Assembly (NCBI GenBank): GCA_977017575.1
Contig: CDRNVI010000101.1
Location: 1 to 55,829 of the forward strand
Direction of reading: 5' to 3'
DNA from: Paramoeba atlantica
Taxonomy: Eukaryota > Protista > Discosea
Length of the DNA stretch: 55,829 nucleotides
Shown here piece by piece: positions 28,251 to 45,066 of the stretch (its first letter is position 1; each line of letters starts with the position of its first letter). The notes under the pieces are model-generated. The model did no database searches. It was not told the DNA's origin and worked only from the letters and a program-made list of their open reading frames with translations. The position numbers and the translations under genes were made by a program.

Positions 28251-28490
28251 CGTCTCCGAAACACACAACTCGCAGACAATTCAACATCCCTTTTTGTTCT
28301 CCAAAATCAGAAAACCTTTCTTTTAAGTAGTTCCGGAAGCATTCTCCAGTCGCTTCCGGTCCCCTAGAAAAAAGGTCGGGGTGTGTCCATTAGCTGAAAC
28401 AATTTGGCACAGGATTGCAGGAGCGGGTTACATGGGTTCTAATGTCCCAGCCTTTATGGACGCTATCTTTAGCGTCCATAAAGTCTTTTG

Positions 28491-31163
28491 CGAGCGAACG
28501 CGGGCACAAATTAAGGAATGTCGCAAAGCGATCAAGCTGAGGGAGGAGGAAGCTACAATGCAACGCAGAGATCTAGATGAAAGATGGGCCGCACAGAGAT
28601 TCTCTAGAAACTCGTGGACCGCGGCATCCGAAACGATTGATAAACCTAACGGAAGAGAGGTAGAAAACACCGCATTTCCCACCTGTGACAGATCTAGCAT
28701 TGAATCATACTTTCAAGAAAGTTTTACCCCCAATGAGCAATCCTCGCGTCTCCCTCCTTCAGATCTACTAGGTCCGACAGCTAGCCAGCCAATGCAATGG
28801 AACCCGATCTCCCGTGAGGATGTCACTGCAGCTGTCACAATGAAGCGCAACGCCAGTTCTCCAGGAACCGACACGATAACTAACAAAATACTCAAAAACT
28901 GCCCATCGACACACGAATACTTTGCATCTGTGTTCAACGATATAATGACTTTCTCTGTGTGCCCGCTATCATGGAAAACCGCAGTAACCAGGCTGATATA
29001 TAAAGCAGGTAGCAAAGAAAATCCGAAAAACTGGCGCCCGATCTCCCTTACTAGTGCTCTAGGTAAAACCTTTCACACGATCATCGCACATCGACTGACT
29101 CAACACCTGACTGAACACCATGTCATTGACCCTCAAATACAAAAAGGCTTTCTCCCTTCCATTAACGGTACACTGGAACACACCCAAACTCTTTGCTCAC
29201 TCCTGCGACATTACCAGAAACACAAAACTCAATATTGCCTCGCACAACTCGACCTGAGCAATGCCTTCGGGTCTGTCCCACATCATATCATACATGCCGC
29301 TCTGAAATGGGCCCAAGTACCGCCGGAGGTCATCCACTACATCAAAAATACCCTAACGGATGCGCACATGCGCATTAAGTGCTAGGAAGGTCTTACGCAA
29401 CCTATCTCTATACGAAAAGGTGTCCTCCAAGGGGATACCCTCTCTCCTATTGTCTTCCTGATAGTGATGTAAATTGTTTTGCGATATGTCCGATTCTCCT
29501 GCCCCCACTTCGGTATGAAACTCCCAAACGGTCTGAACAACTTCCTTAAGGCTTTTGCTGATAACTTAACTATTCTTACTGAAAGCGACGGAGACATGCA
29601 AAACGCACTTGATGCAGTTACCAAAGTGCTGGGCGAGCTAGGCCTTAAGATTAACGTGAACAAGAGTCGAATACAGTGCATGAGCACCCGTAAAGGCGAG
29701 GAACATCCAGGCTATATGACAAGACGTCCGGAAATAAAAGTCTACGGAGAGACCATACCACACATATGTGATGTCGGTAGCACCTTCCTCGGGATGACCT
29801 TGGCACCGGGGTCCCAACAACTGAAAGAGCTGTTTCGTAAACTCGACTCAAAACTAAAACAGTGGATGGAGAACATCACACAAAGTGCCCACAGCCTTCC
29901 CGCTAAGCTTTTGATGTACAAAAATGCCGTTCTCTCACGTCTCCGTTTTCAGTTCGTTATTCACCCGTCGTTAATTTCACCCATCGTTATTCGGATCCGT
30001 GCTACGCCTTCAGAAGCGAGCCACGTCTCACATACGGAAATGGATAAACATGGCGTGTGCCGGAAGCTCTGAAGTCCTGTACTCTTGCCGAGGCTGGAAC
30101 CTTACGAGCCTGTCAAAACTTTGGTACGAATGCACGGGAGAATCTATGACGCAAATGAACAAATCCAAAGATCCAAATGTCCTACATACACTTCGCATAC
30201 GCATACAGGAAGAGCAACACAAACGTCAAAGAGGTCAAATATGACCCGCTACTTTAATTACAGAACATCTGGATGATCCCCGAATGACTCATCAACGGCT
30301 TCGTGAAGCACATGAGGAGCAGCAACGCGCGCCCATCGCAGCCCTATGGTGGCAATTTCCTACGGATCCAGAAATGGCCCAAGAATTCGCTTCTGCCATA
30401 AATGGGATCCGGAATGCGAAGATCTCCCGCTTTGTAGCATCCGTCATGACTCTTACACCGCTCCCTTCCCGAGCAGCGCTTGTTCAATGGGGCCGCAGCA
30501 CCTACAGTAACATGAAATGCCCTATTTGCAACGACCGAGTGCAAACCGTCAGACACACCCTTTCCGCCTGCACCACTTCACTTCAGCAAGGACGATATAC
30601 TTTCCGTCATAACCTTGTCCTTGCCGAATTTGCGAAACATATTAGGGAAGCACAGGGAACTGAGTTTTCATATTTCGACCTACCAGGAGAGCGTAACCCA
30701 CCAGCTTGGCTGAGGGAACACGATACACTGCTCCGTCCCGACGGTTACATTAAACTTCACAATGGGACAGAGTTCCTCATCGAACTCACAGTCCCATGGG
30801 AGGAGAATGCGGAGAACGCTCATCGGAGAAAATCCGAGAAGTACAACATCCTTTTACATACACGGCGACAGGAAAACCCGGACACCTACATAATAGCCTT
30901 TGAAATAGGTGCCCGGGGATTCCCCAATGGGTCATGCAAATATAGTAATGCCATCTTTAACGGCGACCATATTTTGGCCACAAAGTGTCGAGAAAGCATG
31001 ACACAGATGGCCCTCAGGGGGAGTTACATACTCTGGGCTCGCCGAAATGAGGCGACATGGTCGGAGGAGGAAACGTATTGACATTGTCTTCTAAAAAGGG
31101 GGCAATCCCGATGAATGCGGGTCATACCCCCGACTTACTCTACTGGAAAGTATGAAAAATAAA
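28491..31163 (+). mobile_element. RLE-type non-LTR retrotransposon, 5'-truncated copy 1 (defective)
   Basis: RT motifs PGTD, WRPISL, QKGF, LDLSNAFGSV, GVLQGDTLSP, FADN; CPIC...H...C knuckle; RHN, RPDG, IELTVPWEE, RKSEKY; ends TATGAAAAATAAA; near-identical to 38316-40991. Confidence 0.95.
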
Positions 31164-31292
31164 GATCTATTTACAGCTATTTCTACTTTGGGACCCTGCA
31201 GTTTGTGACATGTTTTCGCATTTGTACGACGACTGTTTCACTCCTTTCGTAACGAACCTGCAACAGGCATCTCCATTTATTTTAAATACATT

Positions 31293-31904
31293 TCAAGACT
31301 CCTTTTGAACCCATAATGCAGGAATCTTCCACCATGCTTTAGTTGGAAAAATACTGCGAGCTATTGTTCCATTAAGCCCAGGATTCCCCAGTATAGCGAG
31401 TGTAGCAGTGGGCTTTGCAAGACTCGAGTGCACCAGACAGGAAAGATCCACAAATCCTGTGAATCGACAATTCGATACATTTAATATATTAATGTTGGGG
31501 GGTAGATGGGTCAAGTCCAGCTCCCCTGTAAATAAATTGTTTTGAACCCACAAGTTCAGTAAAAGTTCAGGCAAGGTTGCGAAGTCAACATCGCCACCCA
31601 ACTGATTCGTCATCACCCGGGCTCGTTGCATCGTACGCGGCAAATGCAGCCAACGTAATGACCCTTTCAGCGCACGTGAATACCATCTTACTTCGCTTAT
31701 ACTTTTAGATTCGTCACATTCCACACCGTTCCACTCGCAGGCAGGCGTATGCGTATCCCACGAGGGGTGCGGGTTCCTAACACCACGGACAAATTTAGCA
31801 AGTTCGTATTCTTGCGGCAGAGCAACGCCCTTTACCTTACCTGCGCGTGTCGCTGAGGATGTAGCATCGGCTGCCTCACACAATAGGAGCGAAGAACGTG
31901 TCAT
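31293..31904 (-). CDS. Short LRR protein (AAD subfamily)
   Basis: Intact 203-aa paralogue of 26891-27499. Confidence 0.85.
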   Translation of the reverse strand: MTRSSLLLCEAADATSSATRAGKVKGVALPQEYELAKFVRGVRNPHPSWDTHTPACEWNGVECDESKSISEVRWYSRALKGSLRWLHLPRTMQRARVMTNQLGGDVDFATLPELLLNLWVQNNLFTGELDLTHLPPNINILNVSNCRFTGFVDLSCLVHSSLAKPTATLAILGNPGLNGTIARSIFPTKAWWKIPALWVQKES

Positions 31905-36831: not shown

Positions 36832-37493
36832 TGTTTTTATGCCATTCCACTCACATACAGGATCCTAACATTATTCGAAATTCTTCATTATCAATAGCAT
36901 TCTTACGTATGTATTTTATACGTTCTAACCCTCCTGTCTCCCGGTGGCGTTTAACCCATCGAGAGACAGTTGCTTCACTTCATTTCGTAAAAGCAGCACT
37001 GTCTGCAATCGAACGCCTCTGGTTTTGTATCTCATGGAGGCAAATTACACGTGTTTCATAAGTGATTTGTTGCGTCCAGAAGGTGCGCCTCTGGCGGCGA
37101 AGTGTTTTCGGCATAAAATGGGTTAGAAAGAGTTAAATGGTATTTTATTCATAGTTTGATGCGCTAGAATGACAAAAAATGATAAAAATCTGATTTTTTG
37201 CAGAATTTGTGGTTAAGAATTTCAGTAATTTATTCTCAAGTCGTCATATCAGCTTCAGGGGCGGCAACAATGGTGCCAGTAGTCTTAAAATTTCGAGATC
37301 TGTTGAATGCCGTAGGAATTAGGTCAAAAGCTCGCACGATACAAATTTTAGACCCCCCCACCTTTTTCGTGACCCCCCCTGTATAGTGGCGATGCCGCAT
37401 TTTATGCATACCCCCCTACTATTCGCAATAAAAAAAGTTAAGAACACGATCCTACGAATATTGAGACGGATAGGTTCGCGTAATAAATACGTT

Positions 37494-37678
37494 TCAAGAC
37501 TCTTCTTGAATCCACGACGGAGGAATGTTCCACCATGCTCGAGTAGGCATGTGACTGCGGGCTATTGTTCCATTAAGCCCAGGATTCCCTGTTATGTCGA
37601 ATCCAGCAACAGGCTTTGCAAGATTCGAGTGCACCAGACAGGAAAGATCCACAAATCCGGTGAATTGACAATTGGATA
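37494..37678 (-). pseudogene. LRR gene 3' part (orphaned)
   Basis: SNCQFTGFVDLSCLVH...WIQEES; the upstream part is cut off by the 576-bp insert. Confidence 0.85.
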
Positions 37679-38254
37679 GTGTTTTATCATGCACTTATAG
37701 TGCAGAGATTTACTCACCATGTCCTTATCCCGCATACGCCGGGTGGATCATGTGAGGTTTCGTCCTCGCCGGAGGTGTGCGGGTGCGGAGAGCTGGCGTC
37801 CCAGGTGCAGAGAGCTCGGTTGTCATGTGCAGGTGCAGAGAGCCGGATGCGTAATCCCCATATTACAGTTTCGGGGGCAATCCGGGTGCAGAGAGCTGCG
37901 ACAGAGCCGAGGTGCGGAGAGCTGGGCGACCGCCAGGTGCAGAGAACCGAGTCTCGTCGGCGGAGGACACGTCTAGTGGTCCTCAAGGGAGGCCACCGTG
38001 ACGCATGGCCCTCTCGGAGAGGAAAAAGACAAGTCGAAAAAAGCCGAGAGGGGGAAGCACACTCACTCCAGGGGAGTGAGTCGGGGAGGGGTGAAGTGGT
38101 GAAAGCGCGTCCCCTGCTTCAGCGACAAGAGGGACAGTTCCGACCTTAGTGCCGGCCGGCAACGGGCATGAAAATACAGTAAGAGTATGCCCGTTGCCGG
38201 GGAAAGAAAGGATGAACTAAGGAAAAAGTACCAACAAGGTACAGAAACTGTATC
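37679..38254 (-). mobile_element. 576-bp spliced-leader-headed non-coding insert (SINE-like), copy A
   Basis: Begins GATACAGTTTCTGTACCTTG; splits LRR codons ...GTGTTAAA | TATCCAAT...; GC-rich with CTCTCTGCACC repeats. Confidence 0.75.
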
Positions 38255-38315
38255 TTTAACACATCAATGTTGGGAGGTAAATGAGCAAAGTCCAGCTCGC
38301 CTGTGAATAAATTGT
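38255..38315 (-). pseudogene. LRR gene middle fragment
   Basis: Encodes NLFTGELDFAHLPPNIDVL between the two inserts. Confidence 0.85.
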
Positions 38316-40095
38316 TTTTATTTTTTCATACTTTCCAGTAGAGTAAGTCGGGGGTATGACCCGCATTCAACGGGATTGCCCCCTTTTTAGAAGACAATGT
38401 CAATACGTTTCCTCCTCCGACCATGTCGCCTCATTTCGGCGAGCCCAGAGTATGTAAGTCCCCCTGAGGGCCATCTGTGTCATGCTTTCTCGACACTTTG
38501 TGGCCAAAATATGGTCGCCGTTAAAGATGGCATTACTATATTTGCATGACCCATTGGGGAATCCCCGGGCACCTATTTCAAAGGCTATTATGTAGGTGTC
38601 CGGGTTTTCCTGTCGCCGTGTATGTAAAAGGATGTTGTACTTCTCGGATTTTCTCCGATGAGCGTTCTCCGCATTCTCCTCCCATGGGACTGTGAGTTCG
38701 ATGAGGAACTCTGTCCCATTGTGAAGTTTAATGTAACCGTCGGGACGGAGCAGTGTATCGTGTTCCCTCAGCCAAGCTGGTGGGTTACGCTCTCCTGGTA
38801 GGTCGAAATATGAAAACTCAGTTCCCTGTGCTTCCCTAATATGTTTCGCAAATTCGGCAAGGACAAGGTTATGACGGAAAGTATATCGTCCTTGCTGAAG
38901 TGAAGTGGTGCAGGCGGAAAGGGTGTGTCTGACGGTTTGCACTCGGTCGTTGCAAATAGGGCATTTCATGTTACTGTAGGTGCTGCGGCCCCATTGAACA
39001 AGCGCTGCTCGGGAAGGGAGCGGTGTAAGAGTCATGACGGATGCTACAAAGCGGGAGATCTTCGCATTCCGGATCCCATTTATGGCAGAAGCGAATTCTT
39101 GGGCCATTTCTGGATCCGTAGGAAATTGCCACCATAGGGCTGCGATGGGCGCGCGTTGCTGCTCCTCATGTGCTTCACGAAGCCGTTGACGAGTCATTCG
39201 GGGATCATCCAGATGTTCTGTAATTAAAGTAGCGGGTCATATTTGACCTCTTTGACGTTTGTGTTGCTCTTCCTGTATGCGTATGCGAAGTGTATGTAGG
39301 ACATTTGGATCTTTGGATTTGTTCATTTGCGTCATAGATTCTCCCGTGCATTCGTACCAAAGTTTTGACAGGCTCGTAAGGTTCCAGCCTCGGCAAGAGT
39401 ACAGGACTTCAGAGCTTCCGGCACGCGCCATGTTTATCCATTTCCGTATGTGAGACGTGGCTCGCTTCTGAAGGCGTAGCACGGATCCGAATAACGATGG
39501 GTGAAATTAACGACGGGTGAATAACGAACTGAAAACGGAGACGTGAGAGAACGGCATTTTTGTACATCAAAAGCTTAGCGGGAAGGCTGTGGGCACTTTG
39601 TGTGATGTTCTCCATCCACTGTTTTAGTTTTGAGTCGAGTTTACGAAACAGCTCTTTCAGTTGTTGGGACCCCGGTGCCAAGGTCATCCCGAGGAAGGTG
39701 CTACCGACATCACATATGTGTGGTATGGTCTCTCCGTAGACTTTTATTTCCGGACGTCTTGTCATATAGCCTGGATGTTCCTCGCCTTTACGGGTGCTCA
39801 TGCACTGTATTCGACTCTTGTTCACGTTAATCTTAAGGCCTAGCTCGCCCAGCACTTTGGTAACTGCATCAAGTGCGTTTTGCATGTCTCCGTCGCTTTC
39901 AGTAAGAATAGTTAAGTTATCAGCAAAAGCCTTAAGGAAGTTGTTCAGACCGTTTGGGAGTTTCATACCGAAGTGCGGGCAGGAGAATCGGACATATCGC
40001 AAAACAATTTACATCACTATCAGGAAGACAATAGGAGAGAGGGTATCCCCTTGGAGGACACCTTTTCGTATAGAGATAGGTTGCGTAAGACCTTC

Positions 40096-43000
40096 CTAGC
40101 ACTTAATGCGCATGTGCGCATCCGTTAGGGTATTTTTGATGTAGTGGATGACCTCCGGCGGTACTTGGGCCCATTTCAGAGCGGCATGTATGATATGATG
40201 TGGGACAGACCCGAAGGCATTGCTCAGGTCGAGTTGTGCGAGGCAATATTGAGTTTTGTGTTTCTGGTAATGTCGCAGGAGTGAGCAAAGAGTTTGGGTG
40301 TGTTCCAGTGTACCGTTAATGGAAGGGAGAAAGCCTTTTTGTATTTGAGGGTCAATGACATGGTGTTCAGTCAGGTGTTGAGTCAGTCGATGTGCGATGA
40401 TCGTGTGAAAGGTTTTACCTAGAGCACTAGTAAGGGAGATCGGGCGCCAGTTTTTCGGATTTTCTTTGCTACCTGCTTTATATATCAGCCTGGTTACTGC
40501 GGTTTTCCATGATAGCGGGCACACAGAGAAAGTCATTATATCGTTGAACACAGATGCAAAGTATTCGTGTGTCGATGGGCAGTTTTTGAGTATTTTGTTA
40601 GTTATCGTGTCGGTTCCTGGAGAACTGGCGTTGCGCTTCATTGTGACAGCTGCAGTGACATCCTCACGGGAGATCGGGTTCCATTGCATTGGCTGGCTAG
40701 CTGTCGGACCTAGTAGATCTGAAGGAGGGAGACGCGAGGATTGCTCATTGGGGGTAAAACTTTCTTGAAAGTATGATTCAATGCTAGATCTGTCACAGGT
40801 GGGAAATGCGGTGTTTTCTACCTCTCTTCCGTTAGGTTTATCAATCGTTTCGGATGCCGCGGTCCACGAGTTTCTAGAGAATCTCTGTGCGGCCCATCTT
40901 TCATCTAGATCTCTGCGTTGCATTGTAGCTTCCTCCTCCCTCAGCTTGATCGCTTTGCGACATTCCTTAATTTGTGCCCGCGTTCTCTCGCGTTCCGCCC
41001 GGTTCCTCGTGTAACGTAGCGATCGTTTCATCGTTTCTAAATGGTGTTTGAGATCGGTTACGGTTCTTTCCGCCGCGAGTGGTCGGTATCTACGTCGTGC
41101 ATGTCCGGTACTGGTCCTTATCAGGAAACCTTTCGTCGGATTTGCCTCTATGGCGACTTCATGTGCTGAGACTGCTAATGCGGCACTGAGTAATTCCGCG
41201 TTTCGTACAGCTGCCTCTTTATCCGGTGTAGGGGTAAGTAGTTGAATGCATCTCTCTTTCGCTCTCGATTCGACAATCCGCCACTGTGCCTCATTTAGTC
41301 GTATCGTAACCTTACCTCCGCTTATGGCTTCGTGCTTCTGGAGAAGTTGCGTTTGCAATCTGGTTCGAGAGTAGGCTGCTTGCTCGGGGGAGGCAGGGTA
41401 CTCTGCAGCCGGAGGAGGGCTGTTCGGGTGCTGGATGGCTGCTGCATCGGTCTCTGAGTCTTCGGTGTCTCTTTGCGTAGTGTTCCTCCGGGCATACACT
41501 GGTCCGTATACTTTGCAGCACTTGTGGGCACATTCCACTTTGTTTCGACATGTGTGCTGACACGGGTGCAAACTAAGCTTCGTAGGTGCCCTACTGATAG
41601 TTTGGATGCGGTGAGGGGATACTTCTCGGCACGGGTTCTTTTCATAGTGTACGTCTGAGGGATCTTCATCCCGCTTATGTAGTGTAATATGCAGATGTTG
41701 AAGGAGGGGCACATCCCGTCCGGCAAGAACCTTGAGGATTGCGCGGCCGAGTGCTCCCGCGGAGCTGTATGACTCACCAAGTTTGAAGGTATCATCTTTG
41801 TAGAGGGAAGTCCAGCTGGCGTGCCGTCGGTGTTCTTGCGCGTGCGCTTGTTTTACAACCCTTATATAGTCACATCCCTGGTGATCCATGAGTTCGTCCA
41901 GTGAGGCTGGCTGAACAATTAGGTCGTGGGAGCTTCCGTTCCCTGAAAGCATTTTACTGAGTGCCGCTTGCGCTGCTTGATGAGAAGCAATTCTGGCCAA
42001 ATGAAGATTTTGTTTGTGTTGAAGCGATGCACTCAGTCCAGTAGGTGTTGTGGCGGCGTCATCTAGGTTTCCCGAGTGTTGGTTGTTGAACACCCAGGTG
42101 GGAACTTCATCCGTGCTTTCTTCCAGTAGGATGTGATGGTCTACGGAGACGCTAGGTACCGGTAGTGGGGAAGGGAGGCGAGCGAGCACCTCGGGATACA
42201 GAGATTCTGTATTTTGGTTTTCGTATCCAGGGATCTCGTCGTTTTTAGTGGCACTGCATGAGGTAGCTATCGCGGCGTCGTTTTTGCTGTCGCAGTTTGG
42301 TTGCTCGGGAGCGCGATTTTCAAGGTGCAATAGTGGATTCGTACAATTGGGTTCATCATTCTCTGCTTGTACATTATGCGCGCTTGGAGCTTTGGGGGTA
42401 AGGAAGTCTATGTACCAGAGAAAGATGCGTAGTGGTAATTTTACAAGTTCCAAAATGATGGTCGATGTTGATGTCTTCTTGGTCTTCCCAAGTAGCAACC
42501 AAAGTTCATCGTATTTCCGTGAGACAGGCGTTTTGAAGTTGGAGAGGGTTAGATAGATCTGGTTGATTGCCACTGGAACTAGAGGTATGCTGCTTCGCAA
42601 AAGACTGAGCGCATACCATGTGAGTGCGAATATTAAGTGGACAAGTGTGCAGAATAGTTCCATGAGGTACTTCACGTTATGAAATAGTATTGCAACCTTG
42701 AGGGTCTGCTCCGTGTAGGGGTTGCTCATTTGATCTGGAGTAGTGTGTACTAAGTGGCGTTTGCAGCAGGCATGCTTGCATGTGTTTTTGTTTAGACATT
42801 TAAGTTTACATGGCTTCGTTTGAGGTGGTTCTGTAGAGTTTCGGCAATATGCAGGTTGGGTTACGAAGTAGGGTATTTTCATGAATATTGTCGCCAGTAA
42901 TGCTTCGACGATGCAATATACTCTCCCGAAGAATCTCGGTGGGGTGCTTATATTCGTCAAGTTCGGTGCTGTAGGAATATCGATTTTGTTTATGCGAGGC

Positions 43001-43275
43001 TGTTGCCTCTTACAACACGGGTGAAGACATGTTCGTTTGTTGAGGCACCTGTGTTTACATGGTGTTCCGTGGGTCATGGGGGTTTGCGGTACCATATTTG
43101 CAGTCACTAGTTCGGTTGGCGTGACGCATGATGGTCGTTCGGAGGGGGCACCATTCTCGTCGACGGGACGTCCATGGTCTAAGAGATCAACGGTTGACAT
43201 ATCAACGCCGCGTGGTCCTCCTGTAAGGTCCTGCGGCGCATCAGCATGAGTGCAATGTGAAGGGGGTCGCGTCAT
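40096..43275 (-). pseudogene. Retrotransposon ORF, N-terminal 1059 aa up to the first premature stop
   Basis: Continues in frame through TAG (40096-40098) and TAA (40009-40011) into GVLQGDTLSP and FADN. Confidence 0.9.
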
Positions 43276-43304
43276 GGTAACGATAAAGATAAGAGAAAAA
43301 AAAA

Positions 43305-43333
43305 CAAGGTACAGAAACTGTATTTTTATCGTT
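43305..43333 (-). other. Spliced-leader (mini-exon)-like sequence AACGATAAAAATACAGTTTCTGTACCTTG
   Basis: Contains the kinetoplastid/diplonemid SL core CAGTTTCTGTAC; starts exactly where the flank stops matching 37041. Confidence 0.8.
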
Positions 43334-43483
43334 CAAATTACACGTGTTTCATAAGTGATTTGTTGCGTCCAGAAGATGCGCCTCTGGCGGCGAAGTGTTT
43401 TCGGCATAAAATGGGTTAGAAAGAGTTAAATGGTATTTTATTCATAGTTTGATGCGCTAGAATGACAAAAAATGATAAAAATC

Positions 43484-43531
<48 letters not shown>

Positions 43532-43823
43532 AGAATTTGTGGTTAAGAATTTCAGTAATTTATTCTCAAGTCGTCATATCAGCTTCAGGGGCGGCAACAA
43601 TGGTGCCAGTAGTCTTAAAATTTCGAGATCTGTTGAATGCCGTAGGAATTAGGTCAAAAGCTCGCACGATACAAATTTTAGACCCCCCCACCTTTTTCGT
43701 GACCCCCCCTGTATAGTGGCGATGCCGCATTTTATGCATACCCCCCTACTATTCGCAATAAAAAAAGTTAAGAACACGATCCTACGAATATTGAGACGGA
43801 TAGGTTCGCGTAATAAATACGTT

Positions 43824-44008
43824 TCAAGACTCTTCTTGAATCCACGACGGAGGAATGTTCCACCATGCTCGAGTAGGCATGTGACTGCGGGCTATTGTTC
43901 CATTAAGCCCAGGATTCCCTGTTATGTCGAATCCAGCAACAGGCTTTGCAAGATTCGAGTGCACCAGACAGGAAAGATCCACAAATCCGGTGAATTGACA
44001 ATTGGATA
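43824..44008 (-). pseudogene. LRR gene 3' part, duplicate
   Basis: Identical to 37494-37678. Confidence 0.85.
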
Positions 44009-44584
44009 GTGTTTTATCATGCACTTATAGTGCAGAGATTTACTCACCATGTCCTTATCCCGCATACGCCGGGTGGATCATGTGAGGTTTCGTCCTCGCC
44101 GGAGGTGTGCGGGTGCGGAGAGCTGGCGTCCCAGGTGCAGAGAGCTCGGTTGTCATGTGCAGGTGCAGAGAGCCGGATGCGTAATCCCCATATTACAGTT
44201 TCGGGGGCAATCCGGGTGCAGAGAGCTGCGACAGAGCCGAGGTGCGGAGAGCTGGGCGACCGCCAGGTGCAGAGAACCGAGTCTCGTCGGCGGAGGACAC
44301 GTCTAGTGGTCCTCAAGGGAGGCCACCGTGACGCATGGCCCTCTCGGAGAGGAAAAAGACAAGTCGAAAAAAGCCGAGAGGGGGAAGCACACTCACTCCA
44401 GGGGAGTGAGTCGGGGAGGGGTGAAGTGGTGAAAGCGCGTCCCCTGCTTCAGCGACAAGAGGGACAGTTCCGACCTTAGTGCCGGCCGGCAACGGGCATG
44501 AAAATACAGTAAGAGTATGCCCGTTGCCGGGGAAAGAAAGGATGAACTAAGGAAAAAGTACCAACAAGGTACAGAAACTGTATC
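44009..44584 (-). mobile_element. 576-bp SL-headed insert, copy B
   Basis: Identical to 37679-38254. Confidence 0.75.
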
Positions 44585-44645
44585 TTTAACACATCAATGT
44601 TGGGAGGTAAATGAGCAAAGTCCAGCTCGCCTGTGAATAAATTGT

Positions 44646-45066
44646 ATTTATTTTTTCATACTTTCCAGTAGAGTAAGTCGGGGGTATGACCCGCATTCAA
44701 CGGGATTGCCCCCTTTTTAGAAGACAATGTCAATACGTTTCCTCCTCCGACCATGTCGCCTCATTTCGGCGAGCCCAGAGTATGTAAGTCCCCCTGAGGG
44801 CCATCTGTGTCATGCTTTCTCGACACTTTGTGGCCAAAATATGGTCGCCGTTAAAGATGGCATTACTATATTTGCATGACCCATTGGGGAATCCCCGGGC
44901 ACCTATTTCAAAGGCTATTATGTAGGTGTCCGGGTTTTCCTGTCGCCGTGTATGTAAAAGGATGTTGTACTTCTCGGATTTTCTCCGATGAGCGTTCTCC
45001 GCATTCTCCTCCCATGGGACTGTGAGTTCGATGAGGAACTCTGTCCCATTGGGTAGAACTCTGTCC
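44646..45066 (-). mobile_element. RLE retrotransposon, severely 5'-truncated copy 3 (~0.4 kb)
   Basis: Only NGTEFLIELTVPWEE...EEETY plus the 3' UTR remain; rearranged 5' junction at 45051-45066. Confidence 0.9.

What the first reader, a model, noticed from the sequence alone, without database searches (positions are those of the whole stretch)
43276..43333. Full-length retrotransposon carries a spliced leader at its 5' end
AACGATAAAAATACAGTTTCTGTACCTTG is followed by a 29-nt pyrimidine-rich UTR and the ATG. Its first base is exactly where the flank stops matching the uninserted duplicate (37041). This suggests the element lacks its own promoter, is cut out of polycistronic RNA by trans-splicing and was reverse-transcribed almost to the cap. 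That differs from SLACS/CZAR/CRE, which insert into SL RNA genes: this copy is not in an SL array and has LRR sequence at its 3' side. Alternatively the SL is a relic of an SL-gene-targeting ancestor.
Basis: partly seen in the sequence, partly recalled or inferred. Interest (0 to 1): 0.85.

Follow-up and report, generated by a model that had tools for sequence, protein, structure and literature searches.

The report
Retrotransposon headed by host spliced leader
A jumping gene of the R2 type in a kinetoplastid-like protist begins with a DNA copy of the cell's own spliced leader, so it was copied back from leader-carrying RNA rather than aimed at leader genes, a 5'-end habit I found no published report of for this group.

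Summary
On the minus strand, 43333-43302 is nt 7-38 of this genome's own spliced-leader (SL) exon. I identified that exon from about 40 tandem SL RNA genes linked to 5S rRNA genes. The window copy has two changes. The allelic contig C98 has the same insertion with a perfect SL. The SL ends exactly at the exon boundary and runs into a 26-nt pyrimidine-rich UTR and the ATG.

The element (43333-38317, 5,017 nt) is an R2-type non-LTR retrotransposon with a reverse transcriptase, a CCHC knuckle and a restriction-like endonuclease. It is intact (1,614 aa) in a sister copy but broken here. Independent copies start at different SL positions and share the same SL/UTR joint. None lies in an SL gene.

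Genome-wide there are about 600 SL heads. Fourteen carry a stacked 16-nt SL relic, which shows re-splicing at the leader's internal AG. I found no source copy with an AG acceptor and no RNA data, so how the leader is renewed each cycle is open.

This scan has already noted SL-headed retroelements on other DNA of this genome. I found no paper describing it in kinetoplastids. The nearest precedent is SL-tagged retrogenes in dinoflagellates.

The parts
43302..43333 (-). DNA copy of host spliced-leader exon nt 7-38 (2 mismatches: G16>A, G38>T). This is the 5' end of the element.
   Evidence: The C98 allele has the same head without mismatches.
43276..43301 (-). 26-nt pyrimidine-rich 5' UTR between the SL and the ATG (ATG at 43275-43273).
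   Evidence: The same UTR follows the SL in the C98, C55 and C2 copies.
38317..43333 (-). Whole R2-type (RLE-bearing) non-LTR retrotransposon, 5,017 nt, ending ...GGAAAGTATGAAAAAATAAA.
40096..43275 (-). ORF piece 1 (1,059 aa): N-terminal region with three Cys/His motifs and the first half of the reverse transcriptase.
39409..40002 (-). ORF piece 2: second half of the reverse transcriptase.
38400..39197 (-). ORF piece 3: CCHC zinc knuckle (CPICNDRVQTVRHTLSAC) and restriction-like endonuclease (RPD...ELTV...K).
   Evidence: R2 structures align to the C-terminus of the intact sister ORF.
43205..43241 (-). 37-nt island inside the start of the ORF, near-invariant (two variable positions) across three otherwise diverged sister families. 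Predicted hairpin.
43334..44646 (-). Upstream copy of the target duplication: LRR codons 44584-44646, SL-headed SINE 44009-44583, LRR 3' part plus a piece of a dispersed repeat 43334-44008.
37041..38316 (-). Downstream copy of the target duplication: LRR codons 38254-38316, SINE 37679-38253, remainder 37041-37678.
44647..45050 (-). 404-nt 3' fragment of the same retrotransposon, preceded by 16 nt of filler (45051-45066). Absent from the C98 haplotype.
28490..31173 (+). Inverted, 5'-truncated copy of the same element. It is 100% identical over 2,684 nt to 38308-40991.

Best explanation
The element is an R2-type non-LTR retrotransposon with a reverse transcriptase, a CCHC knuckle and a restriction-like endonuclease. 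It lies co-oriented with a minus-strand gene cluster.

Its transposition template was an RNA that carried the host spliced leader at its extreme 5' end. The leader was joined at the exon's last base to the element's pyrimidine-rich UTR, which is the product expected of SL trans-splicing.

Target-primed reverse transcription started at a nick in an LRR codon repeat. It copied the RNA up to SL nt 7, six bases short of the cap. The cDNA end was joined to a second nick about 700 nt or more downstream. This duplicated the sequence in between, giving the long target-site duplication.

Shown:
- the identity of the head with the host SL;
- the exact exon-boundary joint;
- the absence of SL-gene context;
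- independent 5' truncation points;
- the duplication bounded by the element's two ends.

Inferred:
- that trans-splicing of a read-through transcript produced the template;
- that reverse transcriptase stalls near the modified cap.

Open: how SL-headed DNA copies, which have no AG at the joint, give rise to new SL-headed RNA.
For: SL identity:
- SL genes with the canonical GTATGAGAAGC intron start lie in 5S-linked tandem arrays.
- The window head equals nt 7-38. The C98 allele is perfect.

Joint at the exon boundary, same UTR, different truncation points:
- window and C98 start at nt 7;
- C55 starts at about nt 16, with 7-10 extra bases;
- C2 starts at about nt 21, plus a 10-nt repeat of the SL end.

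Sister families with unalignable UTRs are all SL-headed at G38.

Stacked SL plus the 16-nt relic that follows the leader's internal CAG occurs 14 times in the genome against 0 for the control. One case is in sister family C36. This shows an SL-headed DNA copy was transcribed, trans-spliced and copied again.

In an arbitrary sample, 23 of 27 SL heads outside the SINE family and the SL genes start at nt 1-5, with the mode at nt 3. At least 10 directly follow an A-run.

R2-type protein: intact 1,614-aa ORF in the C2 copy; RVT_1 at E = 2e-30; best solved relatives are R2 proteins; CCHC plus PD..E.K motif; no APE domain.

Target duplication:
- the C98 upstream copy (703 nt) is about 99% identical to the window's downstream copy once the SINE is removed;
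- the X|Y breakpoint at 37040/37041 is contiguous in 24 other loci at 90-93% identity;
- the LRR reading frame is continuous across the other boundary.

Neighbouring genes (PP2C, RabGAP, EDRF1-like, LRR) are all on the minus strand, as is the element.
Against: - No copy of this family or of the neighbouring SINE family has an AG acceptor in place of the SL. The SL/UTR joint in DNA (TTG|TTTT) cannot be re-spliced, so ordinary trans-splicing of daughter copies cannot regenerate the same joint.
- Only about 2% of SL heads show the relic that re-splicing predicts.
- There is no RNA evidence. The only candidate RNA run has no contig on the element.
- The family is small, with three independent 5' ends.
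- A target duplication of 703 nt or more is unusually long for this class. The two haplotypes disagree on its content, so later recombination has reshaped the locus.
Confidence: 0.72

Rival explanations
1. The SL head is a heritable, functional 5' module of the element. It was acquired once by trans-splicing, then passed on as DNA and kept by selection. It might act as an internal promoter or initiator, or as a sequence needed for capping or translation. On this reading it is not renewed by trans-splicing in each cycle.
For: - All 5'-complete copies of this family and its sister families are SL-headed, and no AG-acceptor source exists in the assembly.
- Relic-bearing copies are rare.
- The SINE family's heads start at nt 11-13, not at nt 3. 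This fits an inherited truncated head.
- A 37-nt near-invariant island lies just downstream.
- There is a precedent for a 5' internal promoter in kinetoplastid non-LTR elements: Pr77, bound by factors named TBP and SNAP50 (PMC8190864, PMC1874656, as listed).
Against: - The SL promoter elements known from trypanosomatids lie upstream of the gene and are not carried (my knowledge, not tested).
- Heads truncated at nt 7, 16 and 21 occur in one young family.
- A-run|SL joints place the SL at a true RNA 5' end, which equally fits trans-spliced RNA.
- The 14 stacked relics prove that fresh trans-splicing onto SL-headed copies does happen.
Confidence: 0.17
2. The leader was added during reverse transcription. 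The R2-type enzyme jumped from the 5' end of an unspliced element RNA onto the 3' end of a free SL exon, which is the first-step intermediate of trans-splicing. No AG acceptor would then be needed.
For: - The joint is exactly at the SL exon's last base, without any AG in any copy.
- One to five variable bases lie at the SL/UTR joint in a sister family.
- A-run|SL chimeric joints are common in the genome.
- End-to-end template jumping is an established property of R2 reverse transcriptase (my knowledge).
Against: - Free SL exon is a short-lived species bound in the spliceosome.
- Nothing defines the element RNA's 5' end. There is no ribozyme hit.
- The 16-nt relics after the internal CAG are splicing products, not jumps.
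Confidence: 0.07
3. The head is a relic of SL-gene targeting, as in SLACS, CZAR and CRE. The element, or its ancestor, inserted into an SL RNA gene and carried gene sequence away with it.
For: The element belongs to the RLE-bearing group that includes the CRE clade. The neighbouring SINE's heads begin near SL nt 11-12, which is the SLACS/CZAR insertion point (PMC5814959).
Against: - SLACS/CZAR insert between nt 11 and 12 (PMC5814959). That would leave nt 1-11 upstream. Here nt 7-38 is fused to a UTR.
- There is no SL promoter upstream and no GTATGAGAAGC intron downstream.
- The 3' flanks are LRR or other sequences.
- None of the roughly 40 SL genes lies near any copy.
- The only insertion I found in an SL array is an APE-type LINE in the spacer.
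Confidence: 0.03
4. Chance resemblance, or an assembly or cDNA-contamination artefact.
For: Contigs of the DNA runs break at the SL because it is highly repeated.
Against: - A 32-nt match with two mismatches lies at the exact element boundary, against 0 control hits.
- The same junction is present on two separately assembled haplotype contigs, with flanks and a target duplication.
Confidence: 0.01

Closest known systems
SLACS / CZAR / CRE1-2 (CRE clade, site-specific non-LTR retrotransposons of trypanosomatids)
   Same: Kinetoplastid host. Early-branching non-LTR type with a C-terminal restriction-like endonuclease rather than APE. Physically associated with spliced-leader sequence.
   Different: Those elements insert between nt 11 and 12 of the SL exon in SL RNA genes (PMC5814959) and are flanked by SL-gene sequence. 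This element carries SL nt 7-38 as its own 5' end, fused to its UTR. It sits in an LRR gene, and its sister copies sit in unrelated sequence. Clade placement was not tested.
R2 retrotransposons (28S rDNA-specific; solved structures 8gh6, 9nl3)
   Same: Best solved relatives by sequence. Single ORF with central RT, a CCHC knuckle and a PD..E.K endonuclease. 5' ends are variable with extra bases.
   Different: R2 is co-transcribed with rRNA and, from my knowledge, frees its 5' end with an HDV-like ribozyme. Here the 5' end is the host SL, no ribozyme was detected, there is no rDNA target, and the target duplication is very long.
DinoSL-tagged retrogenes of dinoflagellates (relic spliced leaders)
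   Same: DNA-encoded SL at the 5' end of retrocopies. Stacked truncated relics arise by re-splicing at an AG inside the encoded leader (PMC6050394, PMC5585692, PMC12014239, as listed). This genome holds 14 such stacks.
   Different: There the tagged sequences are mainly cellular genes, copied by unknown enzymes. Here the tagged sequences are the autonomous retrotransposon itself and its relatives, in a kinetoplastid.
L1Tc / ingi with the Pr77 5' hallmark
   Same: Kinetoplastid non-LTR elements whose first tens of bases solve the 5'-end problem.
   Different: Pr77 is an internal promoter that gives unspliced transcripts (PMC1874656, PMC8190864), and those elements are APE-type. Here the first bases are the host SL itself.

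Membership tests
RLE-bearing (R2-type) non-LTR retrotransposons | Single ORF with a central reverse transcriptase | tested here: met
   The intact sister copy L086:385-5229:- has 1,614 aa, with RVT_1 at 971-1207, E = 2.1e-30. The window copy has the same ORF in three pieces.
RLE-bearing (R2-type) non-LTR retrotransposons | C-terminal CCHC knuckle followed by a PD-(D/E)xK restriction-like endonuclease, and no APE domain | tested here: met
   CPICNDRVQTVRHTLSAC at residue 1474, then RPD...ELTV...K (also in the window's piece 3). R2 chain 9nl3_A aligns to residues 906-1607. There is no Exo_endo_phos hit. Catalysis was not tested.
RLE-bearing (R2-type) non-LTR retrotransposons | Target-primed insertion marks: fixed 3' end, variable 5' truncation, target duplication or deletion | tested here: met
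   Nine 3' ends at 98-100% identity all end ...GTATG followed by A5-7 TAAA. The 5' ends fall at SL nt 7, about 16 and about 21, and there are truncated copies of 2.7 kb and 0.4 kb. Target duplications: 10 nt (C55), about 4 nt (C2) and 703 nt or more (this locus).
CRE clade / SLACS-CZAR-type SL-gene-specific elements | Insertion between nt 11 and 12 of the SL exon, flanked on both sides by SL-gene sequence | tested here: not met
   The upstream flank is LRR-gene 3' region plus a dispersed repeat. The downstream flank is LRR codons. Other copies have other flanks. The SL genes lie on other contigs.
CRE clade / SLACS-CZAR-type SL-gene-specific elements | Phylogenetic placement of the RT within the CRE clade | not tested
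   No named CRE, SLACS or CZAR protein came back from the homology search, so I had no reference sequences.
SL-tagged retrocopies (as defined in dinoflagellates) | Complete 3' end of the SL exon joined directly to the transcript's 5' UTR in genomic DNA | tested here: met
   ...CCTTGTTG|TTTTTTT(T)CTCTTATC in the C98, C55 and C2 copies. The window copy has G38>T.
SL-tagged retrocopies (as defined in dinoflagellates) | Stacked relic leaders from re-splicing at an AG inside the encoded SL | tested here: inconclusive
   Not present in this copy. It occurs 14 times in the genome, including sister family C36. The C2 copy has a 10-nt repeat of the SL end that does not follow an AG.

The most novel reading that the evidence does not exclude
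The spliced leader is not just a fossil of one trans-splicing event. It is a working 5' module that these retrotransposons, and a partner SINE, carry in their DNA and depend on. It may be maintained as an internal start signal or a capping or translation signal. Alternatively it may be re-attached by the reverse transcriptase jumping onto free SL exon. Either way it would be a way for a mobile element to obtain a host-type mRNA 5' end in a cell without gene-specific promoters. This reading would explain why no copy with an AG acceptor exists.
Probability: 0.2. Interest if true: 0.88.

Novelty: new variant of a known kind. Interest (0 to 1): 0.7.

Why it matters
Kinetoplastids transcribe genes in long polycistrons and give every mRNA its cap through the spliced leader. 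How mobile elements obtain a usable 5' end there has two known answers. One is an internal promoter (Pr77 of L1Tc/ingi). The other is parasitising SL genes (SLACS/CZAR/CRE).

This locus, together with about 600 others in the genome, shows a third solution written into DNA: the element's template RNA carried the host leader itself. That gives three things:
- a natural tag for dating and counting retrotransposition events;
- a record of how close reverse transcriptase gets to the hypermodified cap;
- a clear puzzle about how the leader is renewed when the joint has no AG, which can be tested with 5' RACE or direct RNA sequencing.

The allele pair (C101 and C98) also documents an insertion-linked target duplication of 703 nt or more, which is unusual for this class.

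Tried and rejected
- RNA evidence. One run search found three holders of unrecorded library type, which I take to be DNA, and one possible RNA run. All were kept as contigs. The RNA-like run has a single SL-only contig and nothing on the element. Expression, transcript starts and SL addition therefore could not be tested.
- Ribozyme or other known RNA at the 5' end. An Rfam scan of 42700-43400 at E <= 10 gave only two chance bacterial sRNA hits.
- Source copy with an AG acceptor. The first 400 nt of the element find only four close copies, all SL-headed. A pattern for AG|SINE-start found only TG| (SL-headed) copies.
- Literature. The 3' part of the SL sequence is in no paper of the library. 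The searches for SL-headed retrotransposons, and passages found by term search in three of the listed papers, gave no report for kinetoplastids. The B. saltans genome paper lists only ingi, SLACS/CZAR, VIPER and TATE.
- Is the phenomenon general mRNA retroposition? Pfam on ten ORFs that follow other SL heads gave no significant family; none of the weak hits reached its curated cut-off (LsmAD-like in three, AFT/GST_N_5 in one). I cannot say that ordinary genes are copied.
- SL-array insertions. The 7.3-kb units on C74 hold an APE-type LINE in the spacer, not this element and not in the exon.
- Simple insertion relative to an 'empty' duplicate at 37041. Rejected in favour of a target duplication.
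- Origin of the window-only block 44009-45066 (RT fragment + LRR + SINE). Three readings remain: a retrocopy of an unspliced read-through RNA, gene conversion, or an older insertion with a 1.3-kb duplication. The near-identity of the two repeats (2 differences in 1,685 nt) slightly favours recent conversion or duplication. This is unresolved.
- Clade placement against CRE/SLACS/CZAR. Not possible, because no reference sequences were available.

Full report
**1. What is at the coordinates**

The feature lies on the minus strand. Reading 43333 downward gives AACGATAAAAATACAGTTTCTGTACCTTGTTT. A pyrimidine-rich stretch follows, then the ATG at 43275-43273, which opens a 1,059-aa ORF with a reverse-transcriptase domain.

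I looked for the organism's real spliced leader in the window's own genome (45.7 Mb, 248 contigs). About 40 places read AACTTTAACGATAAAGATACAGTTTCTGTACCTTGTTG followed by GTATGAGAAGC. They lie in tandem arrays of about 1.5-2.9 kb on contigs C97, C107, C74, C11 and C3. Where I scanned array units, they contain 5S rRNA genes.

The conserved CAGTTTCTGTAC core, the AACT start and the GTATGAG intron start are those of kinetoplastid SL RNA genes (my knowledge). I take the exon to be these 38 nt.

The reversed control pattern has no hit in the genome, against about 610 for the real one.

**2. The element**

Repeats and sister copies bound the element at 43333 (5') and 38317 (3'). It ends ...GGAAAGTATGAAAAAATAAA and is 5,017 nt long.

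Compared with a sister copy on contig C2, the window copy:
- lacks 102 nt at 41998/41999;
- has 13 extra bases around 39494-39512;
- lacks 18 nt at 39162.

Its ORF is in three pieces. The C2 copy has one intact ORF of 1,614 aa, with:
- RVT_1 at residues 971-1207;
- a CCHC knuckle at residue 1474, followed by RPD...ELTV...K, the pattern of a restriction-like endonuclease;
- no APE domain;
- R2 proteins as the best solved relatives, one aligned up to the C-terminus.

Database relatives beyond the organism's own are R2-like proteins of animals at 24-35% identity. A protein-atlas look-up agrees. The element is an R2-type, RLE-bearing non-LTR retrotransposon. I could not test whether it falls in the CRE clade.

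**3. Sister copies and the 5' joint**

The family is small. Nine 3' ends at 98-100% identity fall at about six loci. Four copies keep the 5' end.

| Copy | 5' head | Joint and UTR |
|---|---|---|
| Window (C101) | SL nt 7-38, G16>A and G38>T | TTT\|T8 CTCTTATC (G38>T) |
| C98 (allele of the window) | perfect SL nt 7-38 | TTG\|T8 CTCTTATC |
| C55 | a few extra bases, then SL from about nt 16 to 38 | same UTR |
| C2 | SL from about nt 21 to 38, plus a repeat of its last 10 nt | same UTR |

Contig C98 is colinear with the window over 30 kb at 98-99% identity, so I treat it as the other haplotype. Its perfect head means the window's two mismatches are later changes or assembly errors.

There are therefore three independent insertions. 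All have the SL exon ending exactly at its last base and joined to one UTR, and all are truncated at different SL positions. This is what 5' truncation of a cDNA made on an SL-carrying RNA predicts.

Two related families share only about 75% identity over the first 130 nt. Their UTRs are different, but each is also headed by the SL at G38.

**4. Not an SL-gene insertion**

SLACS and CZAR insert between nt 11 and 12 of the mini-exon (PMC5814959).

- Here the sequence upstream of the head is ...CACGTGTAATTTG, not the SL gene's upstream sequence.
- The SL is followed by a UTR, not by the intron.
- The 3' flank is LRR coding sequence, AAC AAT TTA TTC ACA GGC GAG CTG....
- Other copies have other 3' flanks.
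- No SL gene lies on the contigs or positions of any copy.
- The one enlarged SL-array unit I inspected holds an APE-type LINE in the spacer.

**5. The 'uninserted duplicate' is a target-site duplication**

In the C98 haplotype the order on the minus strand is:

LRR gene ...TGGGTTCAA | AACAATTTATTCACAGG...TTAAATGTATCC... (703 nt) | SL-element | AACAATTTATTCACAGG...TTAAAG [SINE] TATCC... to 37041 | other sequence

The 703-nt upstream block and the window's downstream block, with the SINE removed, are about 99% identical.

- The left edge of the upstream block is continuous LRR reading frame, as in the paralogues at 31543 and 27147. The left edge of the downstream block abuts the element's 3' end.
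- The right edge of the upstream block abuts the SL. The right edge of the downstream block continues into sequence that is contiguous with it in 24 other loci of the genome at 90-93% identity, so it is part of a dispersed repeat. DNA-run contigs show the same continuity (loose ends at 43334).

Both edges of the duplication therefore coincide with the two ends of the element. That defines a duplication made at insertion: a first nick at the LRR site and a second nick about 700 nt downstream. It explains why the flank match stops at the first SL base.

The window haplotype has an extra block in the upstream repeat: a 404-nt 3' fragment of the element, 16 nt of filler, the LRR codons and the SINE (44009-45066). 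With this block its two repeats differ at only 2 of 1,685 positions. I could not decide whether that reflects recent conversion, a retrocopy of an unspliced read-through RNA, or an older insertion with a 1.3-kb duplication.

By contrast, C55 has a 10-nt duplication (GGAGCTCGAC) and C2 one of about 4 nt.

**6. The genome-wide setting**

About 610 places match SL nt 7-35. I took the hits on the first contigs as an arbitrary sample.
- Of 27 SL heads that belong neither to the SL genes nor to the SINE family, 23 start at SL nt 1-5, with the mode at nt 3.
- At least 10 of them follow an A-run directly.

This fits cDNA that runs almost to the cap and then continues on the poly(A) end of another RNA. 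End-to-end template jumping is an established property of R2 reverse transcriptase (my knowledge).

The exact string SL end + TTTCTGTACCTTGTTG, which is the part of the SL after its internal CAG, occurs 14 times against 0 for the control. One case is in sister family C36. This is the mark of an SL-headed DNA copy being transcribed, trans-spliced at the leader's own AG and copied again. It matches the relic leaders of dinoflagellate retrogenes (PMC6050394, PMC5585692, PMC12014239).

**7. What remains open**

The DNA joint is TTG|TTTT and has no AG, so a daughter copy cannot regain the same joint by normal trans-splicing. Yet every 5'-complete copy of this family and its sisters has that kind of joint.
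- No copy with an AG acceptor in place of the SL was found for the element or for the SINE.
- Relic-bearing copies are only about 2% of heads.

Three readings remain:
- rare master copies are missing from the assembly;
- the head is inherited and functional, in which case a 37-nt island at 43205-43241, near-invariant across three diverged families and predicted to form a hairpin, could be part of such a module;
- the leader is attached by a template jump onto free SL exon.

No RNA data exist for the element and no known ribozyme is detectable. All large genes in the window are on the minus strand, as is the element. Read-through transcription is therefore plausible but not shown.

**8. Comparison and novelty**

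The element works like an R2-type retrotransposon. Its 5' end behaves like that of a dinoflagellate SL-tagged retrocopy. It is not a SLACS/CZAR/CRE-type SL-gene parasite. It also differs from L1Tc/ingi, whose Pr77 head is an internal promoter giving unspliced RNA (PMC1874656, PMC8190864).

My literature searches, and term look-ups in three of the papers they listed, found no report of SL-headed retrotransposons in kinetoplastids.

Earlier notes of this scan describe the same habit on other DNA of this genome. I used them as leads and re-tested the SL identity, the 16-nt relic, the R2-type protein and the SINE partner here.

The points specific to this locus are:
- the perfect-SL allele;
- the three truncation points in one young family;
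- the absence of any AG-acceptor source.

Noticed in passing
window 37679-38253 and 44009-44583 (minus strand); about 130 further copies, e.g. L041-L070: A roughly 575-nt non-coding SINE-like family. Its 5' end is SL nt ~11-38 followed by GTAC(A/T)TTTT..., then a hairpin CCGGCAACGGGCAT...ATGCCCGTTGCCGG. Heads start mostly at SL nt 11-13, not at nt 3 as in other families. The base after the SL is GT in all copies seen. No AG-acceptor version exists. In the window it sits at TTAAA^TGTATCC of an LRR gene.
   Followed up: partly
C98:33881-34320 (L085), the allele of window 38253/38254: A 440-nt insertion lies inside the SINE's SL head, between ...AAAG and ACAGTTTCTG, in the other haplotype. It begins with three CCCGGCT(C/G)T(C/G)...AAAG-like repeats.
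   Followed up: no
window 43205-43241 (minus strand): The 37-nt island ATGCGCCGCAGGACCTTACAGGAGGACCACGCGGCGT is near-invariant (two variable positions) in three sister families whose flanking sequence is largely diverged. It is predicted to form a hairpin. It contains the first AG after the UTR's pyrimidine tract.
   Followed up: partly
L001-L030 (contigs C1, C2, C4): Many SL heads directly follow an A-run of another sequence (at least 10 of 27 sampled). This looks like chimeric cDNAs made by template jumping from an SL 5' end to a poly(A) tail.
   Followed up: partly
G000:C1:9755-25061 (L003-L006): Tandem array with a 5,093-bp period. In each unit the SL is flanked on both sides by the same 33-nt sequence (CTTTTCTTATTTGTATTTCGCACGAATAAAAGT).
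   Followed up: no
G000:C74:106800-114300 (L096): SL RNA gene units of 7.3 kb carry a 4.7-kb APE-type non-LTR element (Exo_endo_phos + RVT_1, broken) in the spacer, not in the exon.
   Followed up: partly
L046, L060 (C3, C11 SL arrays): SL RNA genes are linked to 5S rRNA genes on the opposite strand within the same repeat unit.
   Followed up: partly
window 36880-37200: Part of a dispersed repeat with 24 further copies at 90-93% identity. The retrotransposon's second nick fell inside it.
   Followed up: partly
window 43493-43523: A T-run of about 37 (an A-run on the minus strand) where the other repeat copy (37194-37199) and C98 have 6. This is a length change inside the upstream copy of the duplication.
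   Followed up: no
L086:385-5229:- residues 73-92, 156-175, 605-624 (same ORF as window 40096-43275): Three copies of a Cys/His motif C-x-H-x-C-x-N-K-x2-C-x-H-x-C-C-K in the N-terminal half of the ORF. No Pfam match. It may be a DNA-binding module.
   Followed up: no
window 28490-31173 vs 38308-40991: The inverted truncated copy is 100% identical over 2,684 nt to the full copy, while the allelic copies on C98 differ by 1-2%. This suggests conversion between the inverted repeats. Its 3' flank (ATCTATTTACAG) resembles the LRR target (ATTTATTCACAG).
   Followed up: no
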